From positions 1-6,448 of the forward strand of contig NW_021829336.1 in assembly GCF_006345805.1 (NCBI RefSeq): DNA of 6,448 nucleotides, written 5' to 3'. Numbering within the stretch: position 1 is the stretch's first letter; the number at the start of each line of letters is the position of its first letter. The stretch is from Octopus sinensis. Its lineage: Eukaryota. The translations under genes were made by a program, and so were the position numbers. Below are positions 1 through 6,420 of the stretch, in pieces. The notes under the pieces were generated by a model. That model did not search any database and had not been told where the DNA came from. It saw only the letters and a program-made list of their open reading frames with translations.

Positions 1-370
1 TTAAAATTCAATATTTGAACAGAGAAATTTGAATAAGTGTTTTATTTATGCAAAGAAGTGGAGGAATGGAACCGTGTCATGTTTCAGGCTTGTCTTGAAA
101 TTCCAGCACATTTTTGTTTGTTTTTGTGAGAATTTTCTTTTCCGTAGAATTCTTGTGAAATATTTCACTGATGGCACCAGGTTCAAATCCCGTTCCGAAC
201 GATTATTCCTGCGAGTTGTTGTTATTCTTGTTGTTGTCGTCAAATTCTTCACCACTATCGTCCAAGAAGCTCGTTAATCAAACTCATTTTTTCTATTTAT
301 CATTTTGTATTTCTACGAAATTTCTAGATCTACACAGTCGAAAACTCAGCCTAATAAATATAAAAGTGTA

Positions 371-585
371 AAAGGCGACGAGGTGGCAGAACCGTTACCC
401 CACGAGGGAAAATGCTTAGTGGCATTTCATCTGTCTTTACGTTCTGAGTTCAAATTCCGCAAAGGTCAACTTTGCCTTTCATTATTTATTTCGGGTCGAT
501 AAAATAACTAGTTGAGCACTGGGGTTAATGTCACTGACTCAGCCCCTTCCTGAATTTGGTGGTTATGTTCCAAAATTTGATACCA
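371..585 (+). mobile_element. tRNA-derived SINE, copy 1 (Octopus-type, degraded)
   Basis: A-box-like TGGCAGAACCGTT (384-396) and B-box GTTCAAATTCC (448-458) with Pol III type-2 spacing. Clearly homologous to the adjacent copy at 602-800 (shared GTTCTGAGTTCAAATTCCGC, GGTCRACTTTGC.TTTCAT). Resembles an abundant Octopus SINE as recalled; not database-checked. Confidence 0.75.
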
Positions 586-1846: not shown

Positions 1847-1912
1847 TATATGTGCGTGTGTGTATATGTGTGTGCATCGATGTAGGTATATAAATACTTT
1901 ATTGCATATATG

Positions 1913-1943
<31 letters not shown>

Positions 1944-2042
1944 GTACATCTATACATACATACATACACATATATAGCTATATATATGCGCATATATATA
2001 TTTTATACAAATGAAAATATGTATATATATGTGTGTATATGC

Positions 2043-2085
<43 letters not shown>

Positions 2086-2099
2086 CATTATATATTATA

Positions 2100-2139
<40 letters not shown>

Positions 2140-2192
2140 GTGATTGTGTACTGATATAAATATATATATACATATGTATATGTATATATATA

Positions 2193-2227
<35 letters not shown>

Positions 2228-2289
2228 GTGTGTGTGTGTGTATTTATAGATCTATATGTATATATGTATATATGTATATATATATATAC

Positions 2290-2327
<38 letters not shown>
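1847..2327. repeat. Compound, interrupted (TA)n/(TG)n/(CATA)n microsatellite
   Basis: Long TA runs with TG and CATA interruptions, seen directly. Confidence 0.95.
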
Positions 2328-2328
<1 letters not shown>

Positions 2329-2635
2329 TTAAATAACTTTAATGGAGTTAGACTTCATAATTATATATAATTCAAATATTCGTGTATATAAGTGTATACA
2401 TATATATATTAATGTTGGTGGGGGGGGGCTGTATGTGTATTATTTTTCTGGTCTTCTCCGTCTAAATATCCTTTTCCACAGCGTCATCTCTTCCACTGGT
2501 TTTTCTTTTATTTATTTCGCACCTAACATCTACTTAAATATAATCTACAAATTATATTCACATTTATAACAATAATAGTCGAGACAGAATTACAAATAGG
2601 CGGTCTTCAAACGGACACAAGCGTTCGCAGGGAAG

Positions 2636-2732
2636 TGTATATGTCTGCGAGTGTTTTTGTGTGTGTGTACATAGATATACATGGGTATGTATATATGGAC
2701 ATGCCTATCTATATATCCAGATATCCATACGT

Positions 2733-2763
<31 letters not shown>

Positions 2764-2781
2764 ATATGTATGTGTGTGTTG

Positions 2782-2854
<73 letters not shown>

Positions 2855-3136
2855 TATACATACATAGATATAATATATATACGTATATATACGTACCACA
2901 CACATATATATATATATACAGGCATATATGTATACATATACATTTAAATATGTCTGCAATTTTGAGTGTATGTGTGTGGGGGTGAGAAAGATGAGTGCGT
3001 GTGTGTATATATTGTATATATATATGTGTATATATATGTGTATGTATATATAATATATATATATATATATGTATATATATACATATATATATGTATATAT
3101 GTATATTATATATATATCTATATATATATATATATA
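2636..3136. repeat. Compound (TA)n/(TG)n/(CA)n microsatellite; left flank of the retrozyme insertion
   Basis: Seen directly. It includes a long pure (TA)n run around 2787-2848 and ends in (TA)n abutting 3137. Confidence 0.95.
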
Positions 3137-3259
3137 ATAACAATTTAGGAATGGCCTAGACAGGCCATTCGTCCACTAGAAAGAGCAGCCATAACTCCAA
3201 CCGCCAAGTAGTGTAATTCGGAAATAAGGTGAAAATTTAAAAACATTTACCCTAATTCA

Positions 3260-3360
3260 TCTTTATATACGATGCATCGTTTCAGTGTCTTTAATGATAG
3301 AACCAGCTTAATAAATTAAATAAGCTAGTCTACCATAGGTCACACTTCATCAGTAAAAGA
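3260..3360 (-). ncRNA. Type I hammerhead ribozyme, copy 1 (1-nt insertion in stem I; predicted cleavage 3268/3267)
   Basis: Minus strand: UCUUUUA-CUGAUGA (3353-3347)-AGUGU...ACACU-GAAA (3283-3280)-CGAUGCAUCG-UA|UAUAAAGA. Core intact; stem I has a single bulge and stem II has small indels. Confidence 0.8.
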
Positions 3361-3733
3361 AACCTGGGAGAGACGGATATATCGAGGCGACTGTATCAAT
3401 GCCTCGGGAATATCTGTCTTAAAATTTTCAAGACCAACGCATTCGCGCCAAACTTATCGGCAGCAAATATAAACTGCCGATTCAATCTCAGAATTAGTCA
3501 GAAAATTATCAATTAATCAATTTAGGGTAGCAAAAAATTCAGTAAAAATTTATCGCTACCAGCGGCCCAATGGAAAAGAGAAAATAGTCAAAGACTAAAT
3601 ATGTATAAATATACCAATTTAGGAATGGCCTAGACAGGCCATTCGTCCACTAGAAAGAGCAGCCATAACTCCAACCGCCAAGTAGTGTAATTCGGAAATA
3701 AGGTGAAAATTTAAAAACATTTACCCTAATTCA

Positions 3734-3834
3734 TCTTTTATACGATGCATCGTTTCAGTGTCTTTAATGATAGACCAGCTTAATTAAATTAAATTAAGCT
3801 AGTCTACCATAGGTCACACTTCATCAGTAAAAGA
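3734..3834 (-). ncRNA. Type I hammerhead ribozyme, copy 2 (predicted cleavage 3741/3740)
   Basis: Minus strand: stem I UCUUUUA/UAAAAGA (7 bp perfect), CUGAUGA (3827-3821), stem II base AGUGU/ACACU, GAAA, stem III CGAUGCAUCG, GUA cleavage triplet. Confidence 0.9.
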
Positions 3835-4207
3835 AACCTGGGAGAGACGGATATATCCGAGGCGACTGTATCAATGCCTCGGGAATATCTGTCTTAAAAT
3901 TTTCAAGACCAACGCATTCGCGCCAAACTTATCGGCAGCAATATAAACTGCCGATTCAATCTCAGAATTAGTCAGAAAATTATCAATTAATCAATTTAGG
4001 GTAGCAAAAAATTCAGTAAAAATTTATCGCTACCAGCGGCCCAATGGAAAAGAGAAAATAGTCAAAGACTAAATATGTATAAATATAACAATTTAGGAAT
4101 GGCCTAGACAGGCCATTCGTCCACTAGAAAGAGCAGCCATAACTCCAACCGCCAAGTAGTGTAATTCGGAAATAAGGTGAAAATTTAAAAACATTTACCC
4201 TAATTCA

Positions 4208-4308
4208 TCTTTTATACGATGCATCGTTTCAGTGTCTTTAATGATAGACCAGCTTAATTAAATTAAATTAAGCTAGTCTACCATAGGTCACACTTCATCA
4301 GTAAAAGA
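4208..4308 (-). ncRNA. Type I hammerhead ribozyme, copy 3 (predicted cleavage 4215/4214)
   Basis: Identical to copy 2; CUGAUGA at 4301-4295. Confidence 0.9.
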
Positions 4309-4683
4309 AACCTGGGAGAGACGGATATATCCGAGGCGACTGTATCAATGCTCGGGAATATCTGTCTTAAAATTTTCAAGACCAACGCATTCGCGCCAAA
4401 CTTATCGGCAGCAAATATAAACTGCCGATTCAATCTCAGAATTAGTCAGAAAATTATCAATTAATCAAATTAGGGTAGCAAAAAATTCAGTAAAAATTTA
4501 TCGCTACCAGCGGCCCAATGGAAAAGAGAAAATAGTCAAAGACTAAATATGTATAAATATAACAATTAGGAATGGCCTAGACAGGCCATTCGTCCACTAG
4601 AAAGCAGCAGCCATAACTCCAACCGCCAAGTAGTGTAATTCGGAAATAAGGTGAAAATTTAAAAACATTTACCCTAATTCATC

Positions 4684-5068
4684 TTTTAAGACAGATATTC
4701 CGAGGCATTGATACAGTCGCCTCGGATATATCCGTCTCTCCAGGTTTCTTTTACTGATGAAGTGTGACCTATGGTAGACTAGCTTAATTAATTTAATTAA
4801 GCTGGTCTATCATTAAAGACACTGAAACGATGCATCGTATAAAAGATGAATTAGGGTAAATGTTTTTAAATTTTCACCTTATTTCCGAATTACACTACTT
4901 GGCGGTTGGAGTTATGGCTGCTCTTTCTAGTGGACGAATGGCCTGTCTAGGCCATTCCTAAATTGTTGTATTTATACATATTTAGTCTTTGACTATTTTC
5001 TCTTTTCCATTGGGCCGCTGGTAGCGATAAATTTTTACTGAATTTTTTGCTACCCTAAATTGATTAAT
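4684..5068 (+). mobile_element. Inverted 385-bp partial copy of the retrozyme unit
   Basis: Reverse complement of 3986-4372 with about 4 differences. Joined to the array via shared TTTTA (4684-4688). Ends at ...TGATTAAT (5068), followed by (AT)n. Confidence 0.92.
4747..4846 (+). ncRNA. Type I hammerhead ribozyme, copy 4 (plus strand; predicted cleavage 4839/4840)
   Basis: TCTTTTA (4747-4753), CTGATGA (4754-4760), AGTGT (4761-4765) ... ACACT (4819-4823), GAAA (4824-4827), CGATGCATCG (4828-4837), TA (4838-4839) | TAAAAGA (4840-4846). Confidence 0.9.
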
Positions 5069-5090
5069 ATATATATATATACATACATAC
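5069..5090. repeat. (AT)n/(CATA)n microsatellite; right flank of the retrozyme insertion
   Basis: atatatatatatacatacatac immediately after the inverted arm. Confidence 0.9.
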
Positions 5091-5432: not shown

Positions 5433-5464
5433 ATATATATATATATGTACAGTATGTATGTTTG

Positions 5465-5502
<38 letters not shown>
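5433..5502. repeat. (TA)n/(TG)n microsatellite
   Basis: Seen directly. Confidence 0.9.
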
Positions 5503-5503
<1 letters not shown>

Positions 5504-5506
5504 TTG

Positions 5507-5512
5507 TAGTTC

Positions 5513-5551
<39 letters not shown>

Positions 5552-5623
5552 TAGTAACAGTAGCAGCAGCAGCAGCAGCAGTAGTAGTAGTTAGTAGTAG
5601 TAGTAGTAGTAGTAGTAGCAATA
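5507..5623. repeat. Compound trinucleotide microsatellite (TAG)n-(CAG)n-(TAG)n
   Basis: TAG run from 5513, CAG run at about 5564-5581, then TAG again with one extra T. Confidence 0.95.
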
Positions 5624-5676
5624 ATGGATACAGAATATTGAATATACTGGAAACTTTAGTATATGGCATTTATGTG

Positions 5677-5896
5677 GTGTGTGTGTGTGTGTATTTATAT
5701 ATATATATATATACACCATATATATATATGTATATATACATATACAATATATTGTATATAAATATACATATATATTTATATATTATATATATATATTTAT
5801 ATATGTATATATATATTTTTTATTATATATATATGTATATTATTATAATATATATATTTATATATGTATATTATTATATTATTTTATATATATATA
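5677..5896. repeat. Degenerate (TG)n/(TA)n low-complexity tract
   Basis: Seen directly. Confidence 0.9.
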
Positions 5897-5985
5897 ACTT
5901 AGATAACTTTGATAGGTTTCGGCCAGTATAGGCCCAGGGCTACAGCCATTCCTGTAATTACACGCAACTTTCATGTTACTACAAC

Positions 5986-6017
<32 letters not shown>

Positions 6018-6108
6018 CATGTGTGTGTGTGTGTGTGGTGTGTGTGTGCGTACAGATAGATAGATAATACATACATACATGCATACATACATAGACAGAC
6101 AGACACAC
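5986..6108. repeat. Compound (TA)n-(TG)n-(GATA)n-(CATA)n-(GACA)n microsatellite
   Basis: Seen directly. Confidence 0.9.
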
Positions 6109-6154
6109 AAATTTGGGATATGTAAGATATTTATTTACATCATTTACGATGATG

Positions 6155-6420
6155 TATATATGTATGTATATCGAAATATGTCTATATCGATAAATATGTG
6201 AGTGTGTGTGTGTTAGTGTGTGTGCGTGTGTGTGTGTGTTTGCTTGTGTTTGTGTGTGTGTTTGTTCCTGTGTGTGTGTGTATTTGTATGTGTGTGTGTG
6301 TGTGCTTGTGTAAACTGAGTGAATTAGTTACAGAGATGTGTGTGATTGTGTGTACGAGACTGCGCGTATTTGCTTGTATCCGCGTGTGTATATCTGCATA
6401 TATATATATATGTATGTAGG
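6155..6420. repeat. Degenerate (TG)n-rich low-complexity tract
   Basis: Seen directly. Confidence 0.85.

What the first reader, a model, noticed from the sequence alone, without database searches (positions are those of the whole stretch)
4682..4690. The array's RNA-sense 5' end coincides with the predicted ribozyme cleavage site
Seen: predicted cleavage sites fall at 3267/8, 3740/1 and 4214/5, so the next is 4688/4689. The fourth copy matches the unit up to exactly ...CATCTTTTA (4688) and then switches to the inverted arm. With the 5-bp microhomology there are 6 possible breakpoints, so a random break would include the cleavage site about 6/474 (~1.3%) of the time. Inference: the cDNA ran off the 5' end of a self-cleaved RNA. 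This is genomic evidence that the ribozyme was active in vivo and that the array arose by reverse transcription rather than unequal crossing-over. The cDNA also crossed three uncleaved or re-ligated sites, implying a multimeric or circular template, or template jumping.
Basis: partly seen in the sequence, partly recalled or inferred. Interest (0 to 1): 0.85.

Follow-up and report, generated by a model that had tools for sequence, protein, structure and literature searches.

The report
Ribozyme repeat array ending at cleavage site
A 474-bp tandem repeat carrying a hammerhead self-cleaving RNA motif sits inside a (TA)n microsatellite next to an inverted partial copy of itself, and the join between the two falls exactly at the predicted RNA cleavage site; this fits a known kind of ribozyme-bearing retroelement, but one locus cannot prove that the ribozyme set the end.

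Summary
The forward array (3137-4688, 3.3 units of 474 bp) matches its unit up to base 4688. It then switches to an inverted partial unit (4689-5068) across a 5-bp microhomology, TTTTA (4684-4688). A complete type I hammerhead core lies on the minus strand. Its cleavage positions are 4214/5 and 3740/1, a damaged copy lies at 3267/8, and one lies on the plus strand at 4839/40. The next site in register is 4688/9. Only 1 of 20,000 shuffled units gives such a motif, although Rfam reports no hammerhead here.

The coincidence is weaker than a proof. It is 1.3% under a uniform null, 1.7-2.3% given 5-bp microhomology, and about 3-5% if either arm may hit the site. No other copy could be retrieved.

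The locus matches what is published for Penelope-like elements and animal non-LTR retrozymes: head-to-tail units, an inverted 5'-truncated copy at the 5' end, and a (TA)n target. Origin by reverse transcription is therefore likely (about 0.8) and already the published model. Run-off at a self-cleaved 5' end is plausible (about 0.5) but unproven. This is a new member of a known kind. The hypothesis can be tested genome-wide.

The parts
2743..3136 (.). Left flank: long impure (TA)n microsatellite into which the element is embedded
   Evidence: TRF period 2, 197 copies; read directly
3137..4688 (-). Arm A: 3.3 head-to-tail units of 474 bp, with the ribozyme RNA sense on the minus strand. The RNA-sense 5' end is at 4688 (phase 1, U1.1 of the hammerhead 3' product). 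The 3' end is at about 3137 (phase ~130). TRF extends the match to 3124 inside the TA run.
   Evidence: TRF 3124-4688, period 474, 98% matches; unit alignment; ATAACAATTTAGG at 3137
4208..4308 (-). Complete type I hammerhead: UCUUUUA-CUGAUGA-AGUGU(...19-bp hairpin...)ACACU-GAAA-CGA(UGCA)UCG-UA|UAAAAGA. Cleavage between 4215 and 4214.
   Evidence: Descriptor hit with helices I/II/III; local fold z=-5.5; monomer MFE forms the three-way junction
3734..3834 (-). Second complete hammerhead; cleavage between 3741 and 3740
   Evidence: Descriptor hit
3260..3360 (-). Third hammerhead copy, damaged. Helix I 3' strand reads UAUAAAGA (one extra base) and the helix II hairpin carries indels. Nominal cleavage at 3268/3267.
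   Evidence: Fails the descriptor; variants seen in the alignment
4684..4688 (.). Head-to-head junction: 5-bp microhomology TTTTA shared by arm A and arm B. Base 4688 is the last base that matches the forward unit and equals the first nucleotide 3' of the in-register cleavage site.
   Evidence: null models
4689..5068 (+). Arm B: inverted partial unit of 380 bp, RNA sense on the plus strand. The RNA-sense 5' end is at phase 316-321, so it is 5'-truncated and not at a cleavage site. The 3' end is at phase 229.
   Evidence: BLAST of the reverse complement against the array, 98.7%; inverted repeats I1-I7; phases
4747..4846 (+). Complete hammerhead inside the inverted arm; cleavage between 4839 and 4840. 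The cDNA for this arm crossed the site without stopping.
   Evidence: Descriptor hit on the plus strand
4368..4372 (+). TAAAA that the 3'-terminal TTTTA (4684-4688) of a run-off cDNA could pair with in a snap-back. Extension from there would copy 4367 down to about 3989 and give exactly arm B.
   Evidence: Read directly; geometry is inferred. Copy variants do not discriminate (edit distances 4-9).
5069..5082 (.). Right flank: short (AT)7 run followed by unique sequence. Any target-site duplication is hidden in the TA repeat.
3141..3149 (-). CCUAAAUUG motif 4 nt inside the 3' end of arm A
5054..5062 (+). The unit's only other CCUAAAUUG motif, 6 nt inside the 3' end of arm B

Best explanation
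The 3137-5068 block is one insertion of a non-coding, hammerhead-bearing retroelement: an animal 'non-LTR retrozyme', the kind thought to be moved by the reverse transcriptase/endonuclease of Penelope-like elements (PLEs). It lies in a (TA)n microsatellite.

Shown:
- Each 474-nt unit encodes on the minus strand a complete type I hammerhead that would cut GUA|UAAAAGA.
- The monomer RNA is unusually self-paired.
- The block consists of 3.3 head-to-tail units plus an inverted 5'-truncated 0.8 unit. The two are joined head-to-head (RNA 5' end to RNA 5' end) through 5 bp of microhomology.
- Both outer (RNA 3') ends abut TA repeats.

Inferred:
- Reverse transcription was primed from TA-repeat target DNA on A/U-rich stretches of a circular or multimeric retrozyme RNA. 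This gave a multi-unit cDNA.
- The long cDNA stopped where its template ended, at a 5' end made by hammerhead self-cleavage. For a circular template this means the circle opened at that site.
- Its terminal ...TTTTA-3' then paired with a TAAAA. That TAAAA lay either on the same cDNA (snap-back priming at 4368-4372) or at the 3' end of a second cDNA primed from the other target strand (twin-priming-like, as usual for PLEs). This produced the inverted arm.

My probabilities: hammerhead motif genuine 0.95; whole block made by retrotransposition 0.8; junction position actually set by a self-cleaved RNA 5' end about 0.5. The confidence given for this explanation refers to that last step.
For: - Hammerhead: descriptor hits only at the three phased sites, and 1 of 20,000 shuffles gives any hit.
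- Monomer fold: MFE -152 kcal/mol against -104 +/- 6 for shuffles, z=-8.0, with helices I, II and III drawn in the MFE. The opposite strand folds less well (z=-5.9).
- ACGAUGCAUCGU is a perfect 12-nt palindrome at helix III. This is the hallmark of animal type I hammerheads that can act as dimers (PMC4209133).
- Retrozyme traits: tandem units, GC 36%, no ORF above 51 aa, no protein homologues. These match PMC7229834.
- PLE traits: partial tandems, an inverted 5'-truncated copy at the 5' end and (TA)n insertion bias are described in PMC8557442. Retrozymes are proposed as PLE derivatives in 10.64898/2026.07.22.740005.
- Junction: the donor match ends exactly at U1.1. The chance is 1.3% (uniform) to 1.7-2.3% (microhomology-conditioned).
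- Microhomology at the very end of the donor is what annealing of a run-off cDNA 3' end predicts.
- Both outer ends lie 4-6 nt after the unit's only two CCUAAAUUG motifs. This is as expected if both are reverse-transcription start sites.
- Precedent for ribozyme-defined 5' junctions exists in R2 (PMC3774820).
Against: - This is one locus and the coincidence was noticed after the fact. Allowing either arm to hit a site raises the chance to 2.6-5.5%.
- The breakpoint is ambiguous over six positions.
- The same cDNAs crossed four intact cleavage sites without stopping (3 in arm A, 1 in arm B).
- Arm B's own 5' end is not at a site.
- No poly(A), no recognisable target-site duplication and no second copy are available to show mobility.
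- Rfam does not recognise the hammerhead.
- A10.1-U11.1 replaces the common G-C pair, and activity is untested.
- Copy variants do not tell snap-back from other routes.
Confidence: 0.5

Rival explanations
1. The block is a retrotransposition product, but the junction position is chance. Two cDNAs were primed from the two target strands (two-ended, twin-priming-like TPRT typical of PLE insertions), or one 5'-truncated cDNA was involved. They were joined wherever a few bases of microhomology allowed. Hammerhead cleavage played no part in setting the end.
For: - The head-to-head layout with an inverted 5'-truncated copy is routine for PLEs, including clades that have no hammerhead at all (Naiads; PMC8557442). 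The inversion therefore does not need a ribozyme.
- Arm B is truncated at phase 316-321, away from any cleavage site.
- TTTTA/TAAAA words are common in this 64% A+T unit: TAAAA occurs 4 times per unit.
- Both outer ends look like equivalent priming sites.
Against: Among the 172 possible 5-bp forward/inverted junction classes, only 3 end exactly at the site and 4 include it. This reading needs a 2-5% coincidence.
Confidence: 0.3
2. The array is an ordinary satellite that grew by unequal crossing-over or replication slippage. The inverted arm arose later at the DNA level by a microhomology-mediated template switch or fold-back during replication or repair (FoSTeS/MMBIR-like). No RNA was involved.
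For: - A 5-bp microhomology at an inversion junction is the classic signature of replicative template switching.
- The geometry (3' end at 4688 pairing with 4368-4372 and copying back) works for any DNA polymerase.
- There is no poly(A) and no visible target-site duplication.
Against: - The block is compact and bounded on both sides by the same (TA)n tract.
- Both outer ends fall at equivalent CCUAAAUUG+A/U contexts.
- All copies are about equally diverged, with 4-9 differences.
- This exact architecture is the documented product of PLE-type retrotransposition (PMC8557442).
- A second template switch back to the flank would be needed.
- It also needs the same 2-5% coincidence.
Confidence: 0.12
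3. The inverted junction is an assembly or read artefact, such as a chimeric or fold-back long read collapsed into the consensus.
For: - Differences among copies are mostly single-base homopolymer indels, which is typical of long-read consensus.
- PLE-type tandem/inverted structures are known to trouble assemblies (PMC8557442).
Against: - The junction is not a zero-spacer palindrome as fold-back reads give. The arms are offset by 316-321 nt of phase.
- The inverted arm has private variants and runs on into unique flank.
Confidence: 0.04

Closest known systems
Animal non-LTR retrozymes (Cervera & de la Pena 2020, PMC7229834; review PMC7761336)
   Same: [quoted passage not shown]
- Low GC (36% here).
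- No LTR, PBS or PPT and no coding capacity.
- Highly self-paired monomer RNA.
- The published model is target-primed reverse transcription of a circular RNA giving tandem cDNA copies.
   Different: - The unit is 474 bp, slightly above the published 150-450 bp range.
- Helix II is very long: 5 bp, an internal loop and a 19-bp hairpin.
- A10.1-U11.1 replaces the usual G-C pair.
- Rfam models do not detect it.
- Expression, cleavage and circularisation are untested.
- The papers read here do not describe array 5' ends relative to the cleavage site.
Penelope-like element (PLE) insertion architecture (Craig et al. 2021, PMC8557442; Cervera & de la Pena 2014, PMC4209133)
   Same: - Head-to-tail partial tandems.
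- An inverted 5'-truncated copy immediately at the 5' end.
- Insertion into microsatellites, including (TA)n, which hides target-site duplications.
- Hammerheads in the repeats.
- Hammerhead pairs 100-700 bp apart on opposite strands have been reported in Schistosoma.
   Different: - There is no RT/GIY-YIG ORF here, so the element is non-autonomous.
- The hammerhead is a full one with helix III, not the minimal PLE variant.
- The 30-40 bp 'tail' could not be identified.
R2 and other LINEs with HDV-like or twister ribozymes at the 5' end (PMC3774820; PMC7761336)
   Same: A self-cleaving ribozyme makes the 5' end of the template RNA, and that end corresponds to the 5' junction of the insertion.
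   Different: - The ribozyme class differs: HDV-like or twister, not hammerhead.
- Those ribozymes stay on the element downstream of the cut. Here the hammerhead core lies upstream of the cut and is lost from the terminal unit.
- R2 is site-specific and autonomous.
L1 twin priming (5'-inverted L1 insertions; PMC2912911, PMC2837659)
   Same: Two cDNAs are primed from the two target strands and joined head-to-head with microhomology at the inversion junction.
   Different: - There is no poly(A) tail and no clear target-site duplication.
- The inner and outer ends of the two arms are not contiguous in phase (130 against 316-321).
- The likely enzyme is a PLE RT/GIY-YIG, not the L1 ORF2 protein.

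Membership tests
Hammerhead ribozyme, type I | Conserved core C3 U4 G5 A6 N7 G8 A9, G12 A13 A14, A15.1-U16.1 and H17 at the cleavage site | tested here: met
   CUGAUGA ... GAAA ... U-A| is found at three phased sites. 1 of 20,000 shuffled units gives a hit.
Hammerhead ribozyme, type I | Three helices around the core, with helices II and III capped by loops and helix I open | tested here: met
   Helix I 7 bp, helix II 5 bp plus a 19-bp extension, helix III 4 bp plus a UGCA loop. All are present in the MFE of the 474-nt monomer.
Hammerhead ribozyme, type I | Match to the curated Rfam hammerhead covariance models | tested here: not met
   No hammerhead family is listed at E<=1 on the window or at E<=10 on 3120-5075. 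The likely cause is the ~60-nt helix II insertion, but I could not test that.
Hammerhead ribozyme, type I | Self-cleavage at the predicted phosphodiester | not testable with these tools
   Needs in vitro transcription of monomer and dimer constructs.
Animal non-LTR retrozyme | Short tandem repeats (150-450 bp) each carrying a type I hammerhead, with low GC | tested here: met
   Period 474 (slightly long), 3.3 copies plus 0.8 inverted, GC 36%; criteria from PMC7229834.
Animal non-LTR retrozyme | Non-coding; no LTR, PBS or PPT | tested here: met
   Longest stop-free stretch is 47 aa. A concatenated six-frame query finds no homologue.
Animal non-LTR retrozyme | Monomer RNA highly self-paired | tested here: met
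   z=-8.0 against shuffles.
Animal non-LTR retrozyme | Expressed as linear and circular monomer RNAs; many dispersed genomic copies | not testable with these tools
   No transcriptome and no host genome are available. No other copy turned up in any collection searched.
PLE-type insertion | Partial head-to-tail tandem plus an inverted 5'-truncated copy adjacent to the 5' end | tested here: met
   Arm A 3137-4688 (-) and arm B 4689-5068 (+) are joined head-to-head; criterion from PMC8557442.
PLE-type insertion | Microsatellite target, such as (TA)n, obscuring the target-site duplication | tested here: met
   (TA)n at 2743-3136 and (AT)7 at 5069-5082.
PLE-type insertion | RT plus GIY-YIG endonuclease ORF | tested here: not met
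   No such ORF exists in the window. The element would have to be mobilised in trans.
PLE-type insertion | 30-40 bp 'tail' extension at one end | tested here: inconclusive
   The two 3' ends differ in phase (130 against 229). No separate tail could be defined from one locus.
L1-like twin priming | Poly(A) at the 3' end, a target-site duplication, and inverted and direct segments contiguous in the template | tested here: not met
   There is no poly(A). Any duplication is hidden in the TA repeat. The phases are not contiguous.

The most novel reading that the evidence does not exclude
Hammerhead self-cleavage defines the 5' terminus of the RNA template used when PLE machinery copies retrozymes. 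The run-off cDNA 3' end then primes the inverted 5'-truncated copy that is so typical of PLE-type insertions, either by snap-back or by annealing to a second cDNA. This would give the hammerheads of retrozymes and PLEs a concrete role in integration. It would also explain the tandem/inverted architecture, and the signature would be readable genome-wide.
Probability: 0.3. Interest if true: 0.65.

Novelty: new member of a known kind. Interest (0 to 1): 0.4.

Why it matters
The role of hammerheads in PLEs is called 'unknown' or 'a mystery' in the reviews read here (PMC7761336, PMC8557442). The origin of the tandem/inverted PLE insertion structure is also said to be undefined. If array 5' ends and inversion junctions are enriched at the cleavage site across a genome, that would be the first genomic footprint linking ribozyme cleavage to retrozyme/PLE integration. 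R2 ribozymes offer the parallel. It would also support reverse transcription, rather than unequal crossing-over, as the source of these 'satellite' arrays. From this single locus the idea is only a lead that can be tested cheaply.

Tried and rejected
- Other copies of the family. Exact-product look-ups of the 33-aa and 51-aa repeat ORFs found nothing on record. A 21-mer from the hammerhead had 0 hits in viral contigs and metagenome contigs. A gapped core pattern, CTGATGAAGTGT N40-70 ACACTGAAAC, had 0 hits in metagenome contigs. In genome contigs it had 1 hit, in a Hyphomicrobiales MAG, which has no helix I or III and is a chance match; I estimate about 2 such hits by chance. A 404-aa concatenate of all stop-free stretches of the unit found no homologue. 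The enrichment test could therefore not be run.
- Rfam. No hammerhead was reported. The mir-297/466/3149 and MIR7723 hits are microsatellite or inverted-repeat artefacts far below the gathering scores.
- Using copy-specific variants to decide whether arm B was copied from units u4/u3 (snap-back). The edit distances of 4-9 are uninformative.
- Target-site duplication. It is hidden by the TA repeat.
- Organism identification. ARAGORN found no tRNA, a text search for the SINE-like B-box string found nothing, and there is no credible coding ORF. The microsatellite and SINE-rich look suggests an invertebrate such as a cephalopod, but this rests on my own impression only.
- Remnants of the unit elsewhere in the window. 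None were found.

Full report
**What is there.** The window is A+T-rich eukaryotic DNA full of (TA)n, (TG)n and (TAG)n microsatellites. Tandem Repeats Finder reports one long-period array, 3124-4688, with period 474, 3.3 copies and 98% matches. Directly after it, 4689-5068 is the reverse complement of the same unit at 98.7-99% identity. The left boundary of unit-specific sequence is 3137 (ATAACAATTTAGG). The right boundary is 5068 (...CCCTAAATTGATTAAT). Beyond them lie (TA)n at 2743-3136 and (AT)7 at 5069-5082. No other fragment of the unit occurs in the window.

**The ribozyme.** On the minus strand each unit reads UCUUUUA-CUGAUGA-AGUGU...ACACU-GAAA-CGAUGCAUCG-UA|UAAAAGA. This carries every conserved hammerhead core position:
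- C3-A9, G12-A14, A15.1-U16.1 and H17 = A.
- Helix I is 7 bp.
- Helix II is 5 bp, prolonged by an internal loop and a 19-bp hairpin.
- Helix III is 4 bp with a UGCA loop.

Helices II and III are capped and helix I is open, so it is type I. A descriptor I wrote finds it only at minus-strand H17 = 4215 and 3741 and at plus-strand H17 = 4839 in the inverted arm. Only 1 of 20,000 dinucleotide-preserving shuffles of the unit gives any hit on either strand. The 474-nt monomer in this sense folds to -152 kcal/mol against -104 +/- 6 for shuffles (z = -8.0). The minimum-energy structure itself draws helices I, II and III with the core unpaired. The other strand folds less well (z = -5.9). ACGAUGCAUCGU is a perfect 12-nt palindrome. 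This is the feature that lets animal type I hammerheads pair as dimers in multimeric RNA (PMC4209133).

Against this, Rfam lists no hammerhead family, even at E<=10 on 2 kb. I suspect the long helix II is the cause but could not test that. The copy at 3267/8 has an extra base in helix I (TATAAAG) and a damaged helix II, and it fails the descriptor. Catalysis is untested.

**The observation.** Cleavage positions on plus-strand coordinates are 4214/5 and 3740/1, nominally 3267/8, and 4839/40 in the inverted arm. The next in register is 4688/9. The sequence is ...CATC[TTTTA]AGACAG.... TTTTA (4684-4688) belongs to both arms, with mismatches on both sides. That gives six possible breakpoints. The last base that can be assigned to the forward unit, 4688, is the complement of U1.1, the first nucleotide of the hammerhead 3' product.

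**How surprising is it?**
- The uniform null gives 6/474 = 1.3%.
- I listed all maximal microhomology blocks between the periodic unit and its reverse complement. Of 172 possible 5-bp junction classes, 3 end exactly at the site (1.7%) and 4 include it (2.3%). Other length ranges give 0.2-2.9%.
- A hit by the inverted arm's inner end would have been equally noteworthy. The fair figure is therefore 2.6-5.5%.

This is suggestive, not significant, and it was noticed after the fact.

**Anatomy in RNA sense (U1.1 = phase 1).**
- Arm A runs from phase 1 (4688) through three intact cleavage sites to phase ~130 (3137).
- Arm B runs from phase 316-321 (4684/4689) through one intact site to phase 229 (5068).
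- The arms are head-to-head, with RNA 5' ends at the junction and RNA 3' ends facing the TA repeats.
- Both 3' ends lie 4-6 nt after the unit's only two CCUAAAUUG motifs (phases 118 and 215). Both are followed by A/U-only sequence that merges into the TA repeat.
- The unit has 24 A/T-only stretches of 5 nt or more, so I estimate the chance of this at roughly 2-4% (no null model was run).

This second coincidence suggests that both outer ends are places where reverse transcription started on target (TA)n DNA.

**What it is.** The traits match animal non-LTR retrozymes: type I hammerhead in each unit, tandem units of a few hundred bp, GC 36%, no coding capacity and a strongly self-paired RNA (PMC7229834). 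[quoted passage not shown] PLEs have been proposed as the mobilisers of retrozymes (PMC7229834, PMC7761336). A 2026 preprint argues that animal retrozymes are PLE derivatives (10.64898/2026.07.22.740005). The published model already has a target-primed circular RNA copied into tandem cDNA. So 'array arose by reverse transcription' is likely here (I put it at about 0.8), but it is not a new idea.

**How the junction may have formed.** If the long cDNA (the plus strand of arm A) ran off a template whose 5' end was made by hammerhead cleavage, its 3' end would be ...CATCTTTTA-3'. For a circular template, the circle would have opened at that site after about 3.3 turns. Those five terminal bases can pair with TAAAA at 4368-4372 on the same strand. 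Extension would then copy 4367 back to about 3989, which is exactly arm B (snap-back, read). Alternatively they can pair with the TAAAA-3' end of a second cDNA primed from the other target strand, as in twin priming. The similar contexts of the two outer ends favour this second route. Copy variants cannot separate the two routes: arm B differs from every candidate source by 4-9 edits. Microhomology lying at the very end of the donor is what a run-off end predicts.

Weighing a plausible 10-30% chance that an arm is 'full length' against a 3-5% chance coincidence, I put the run-off reading at about 0.5.

**Rivals.**
- (a) Retrotransposition, but with a junction set only by microhomology. PLE clades without any hammerhead make the same inverted copies (PMC8557442). 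Probability 0.3.
- (b) A DNA-level template switch in a satellite that grew by unequal exchange. Probability 0.12. It is disfavoured by the compact block inside one TA tract, the matching outer ends and the evenly diverged copies.
- (c) An assembly artefact. Probability 0.04. The junction is not a zero-spacer palindrome, and arm B has private variants.

**Comparison with known systems.** A ribozyme-made RNA 5' end that equals the 5' junction of the insertion is established for R2 with HDV-like ribozymes (PMC3774820). It has been suggested for other LINEs (PMC7761336). For hammerheads in PLEs and retrozymes the role is still called unknown (PMC7761336, PMC8557442). In the papers I read I found no statement that array ends or inversion junctions map to the hammerhead site.

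**What failed.** I could not retrieve any other copy of the family from any collection (the one hit is chance). The decisive tabulation of termini therefore remains to be done in the source genome.

**Verdict.** The locus is a new member of a known kind, a hammerhead retrozyme insertion with PLE-type architecture. The cleavage-site junction is a good hypothesis that can be tested genome-wide, not yet evidence of in vivo ribozyme activity.

Noticed in passing
window 3137-3149 (-) and 5053-5068 (+): Both RNA-sense 3' ends of the two arms lie 4-6 nt after the unit's only two CCUAAAUUG motifs (phases 118 and 215) and then merge into the TA repeat. This may mark a preferred start site for reverse transcription. 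I estimate the chance at roughly 2-4%.
   Followed up: partly
window 370-483 and 602-713: Two copies of a ~114-bp SINE-like repeat, 79% identical, with a tRNA B-box-like GAGTTCAAATTCCGC. A similar GGTTCAAATCCCG lies near 180-193. ARAGORN calls no tRNA.
   Followed up: partly
window 3260-3360 (-): The hammerhead at the u2/u1 boundary is decayed. It has an extra base in helix I (UAUAAAGA) and indels in the helix II hairpin of unit u2.
   Followed up: yes
window 3137-5068: Differences among the repeat copies are mostly single-base homopolymer indels (CCC/CC, GG/G, AAA/AA). These could be real decay or long-read consensus errors.
   Followed up: no
window 1903-3136, 5433-6311: Rfam 'mir-297/466/3149/1277' matches are all in TA/TG microsatellites and lie far below gathering scores. 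The MIR7723 match at 4648-4880 is just the inverted repeat around the junction. All are artefacts.
   Followed up: yes
window 4606-4688 and 4840-4922: The head-to-head junction creates an 83-nt perfect inverted repeat with a 151-nt spacer. Longer imperfect arms are also present. This is a potential cruciform or hairpin and a likely source of assembly or replication trouble.
   Followed up: no
window 5513-5618: (TAG)n/(CAG)n trinucleotide repeat of about 35 copies, flanked by TA and TG microsatellites.
   Followed up: no
L001 1497-1569 (-): The only hit of the gapped hammerhead-core pattern in bacterial and archaeal genomes (a Hyphomicrobiales MAG). It lacks helices I and III and looks like coding sequence, so it is a chance match.
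   Followed up: yes
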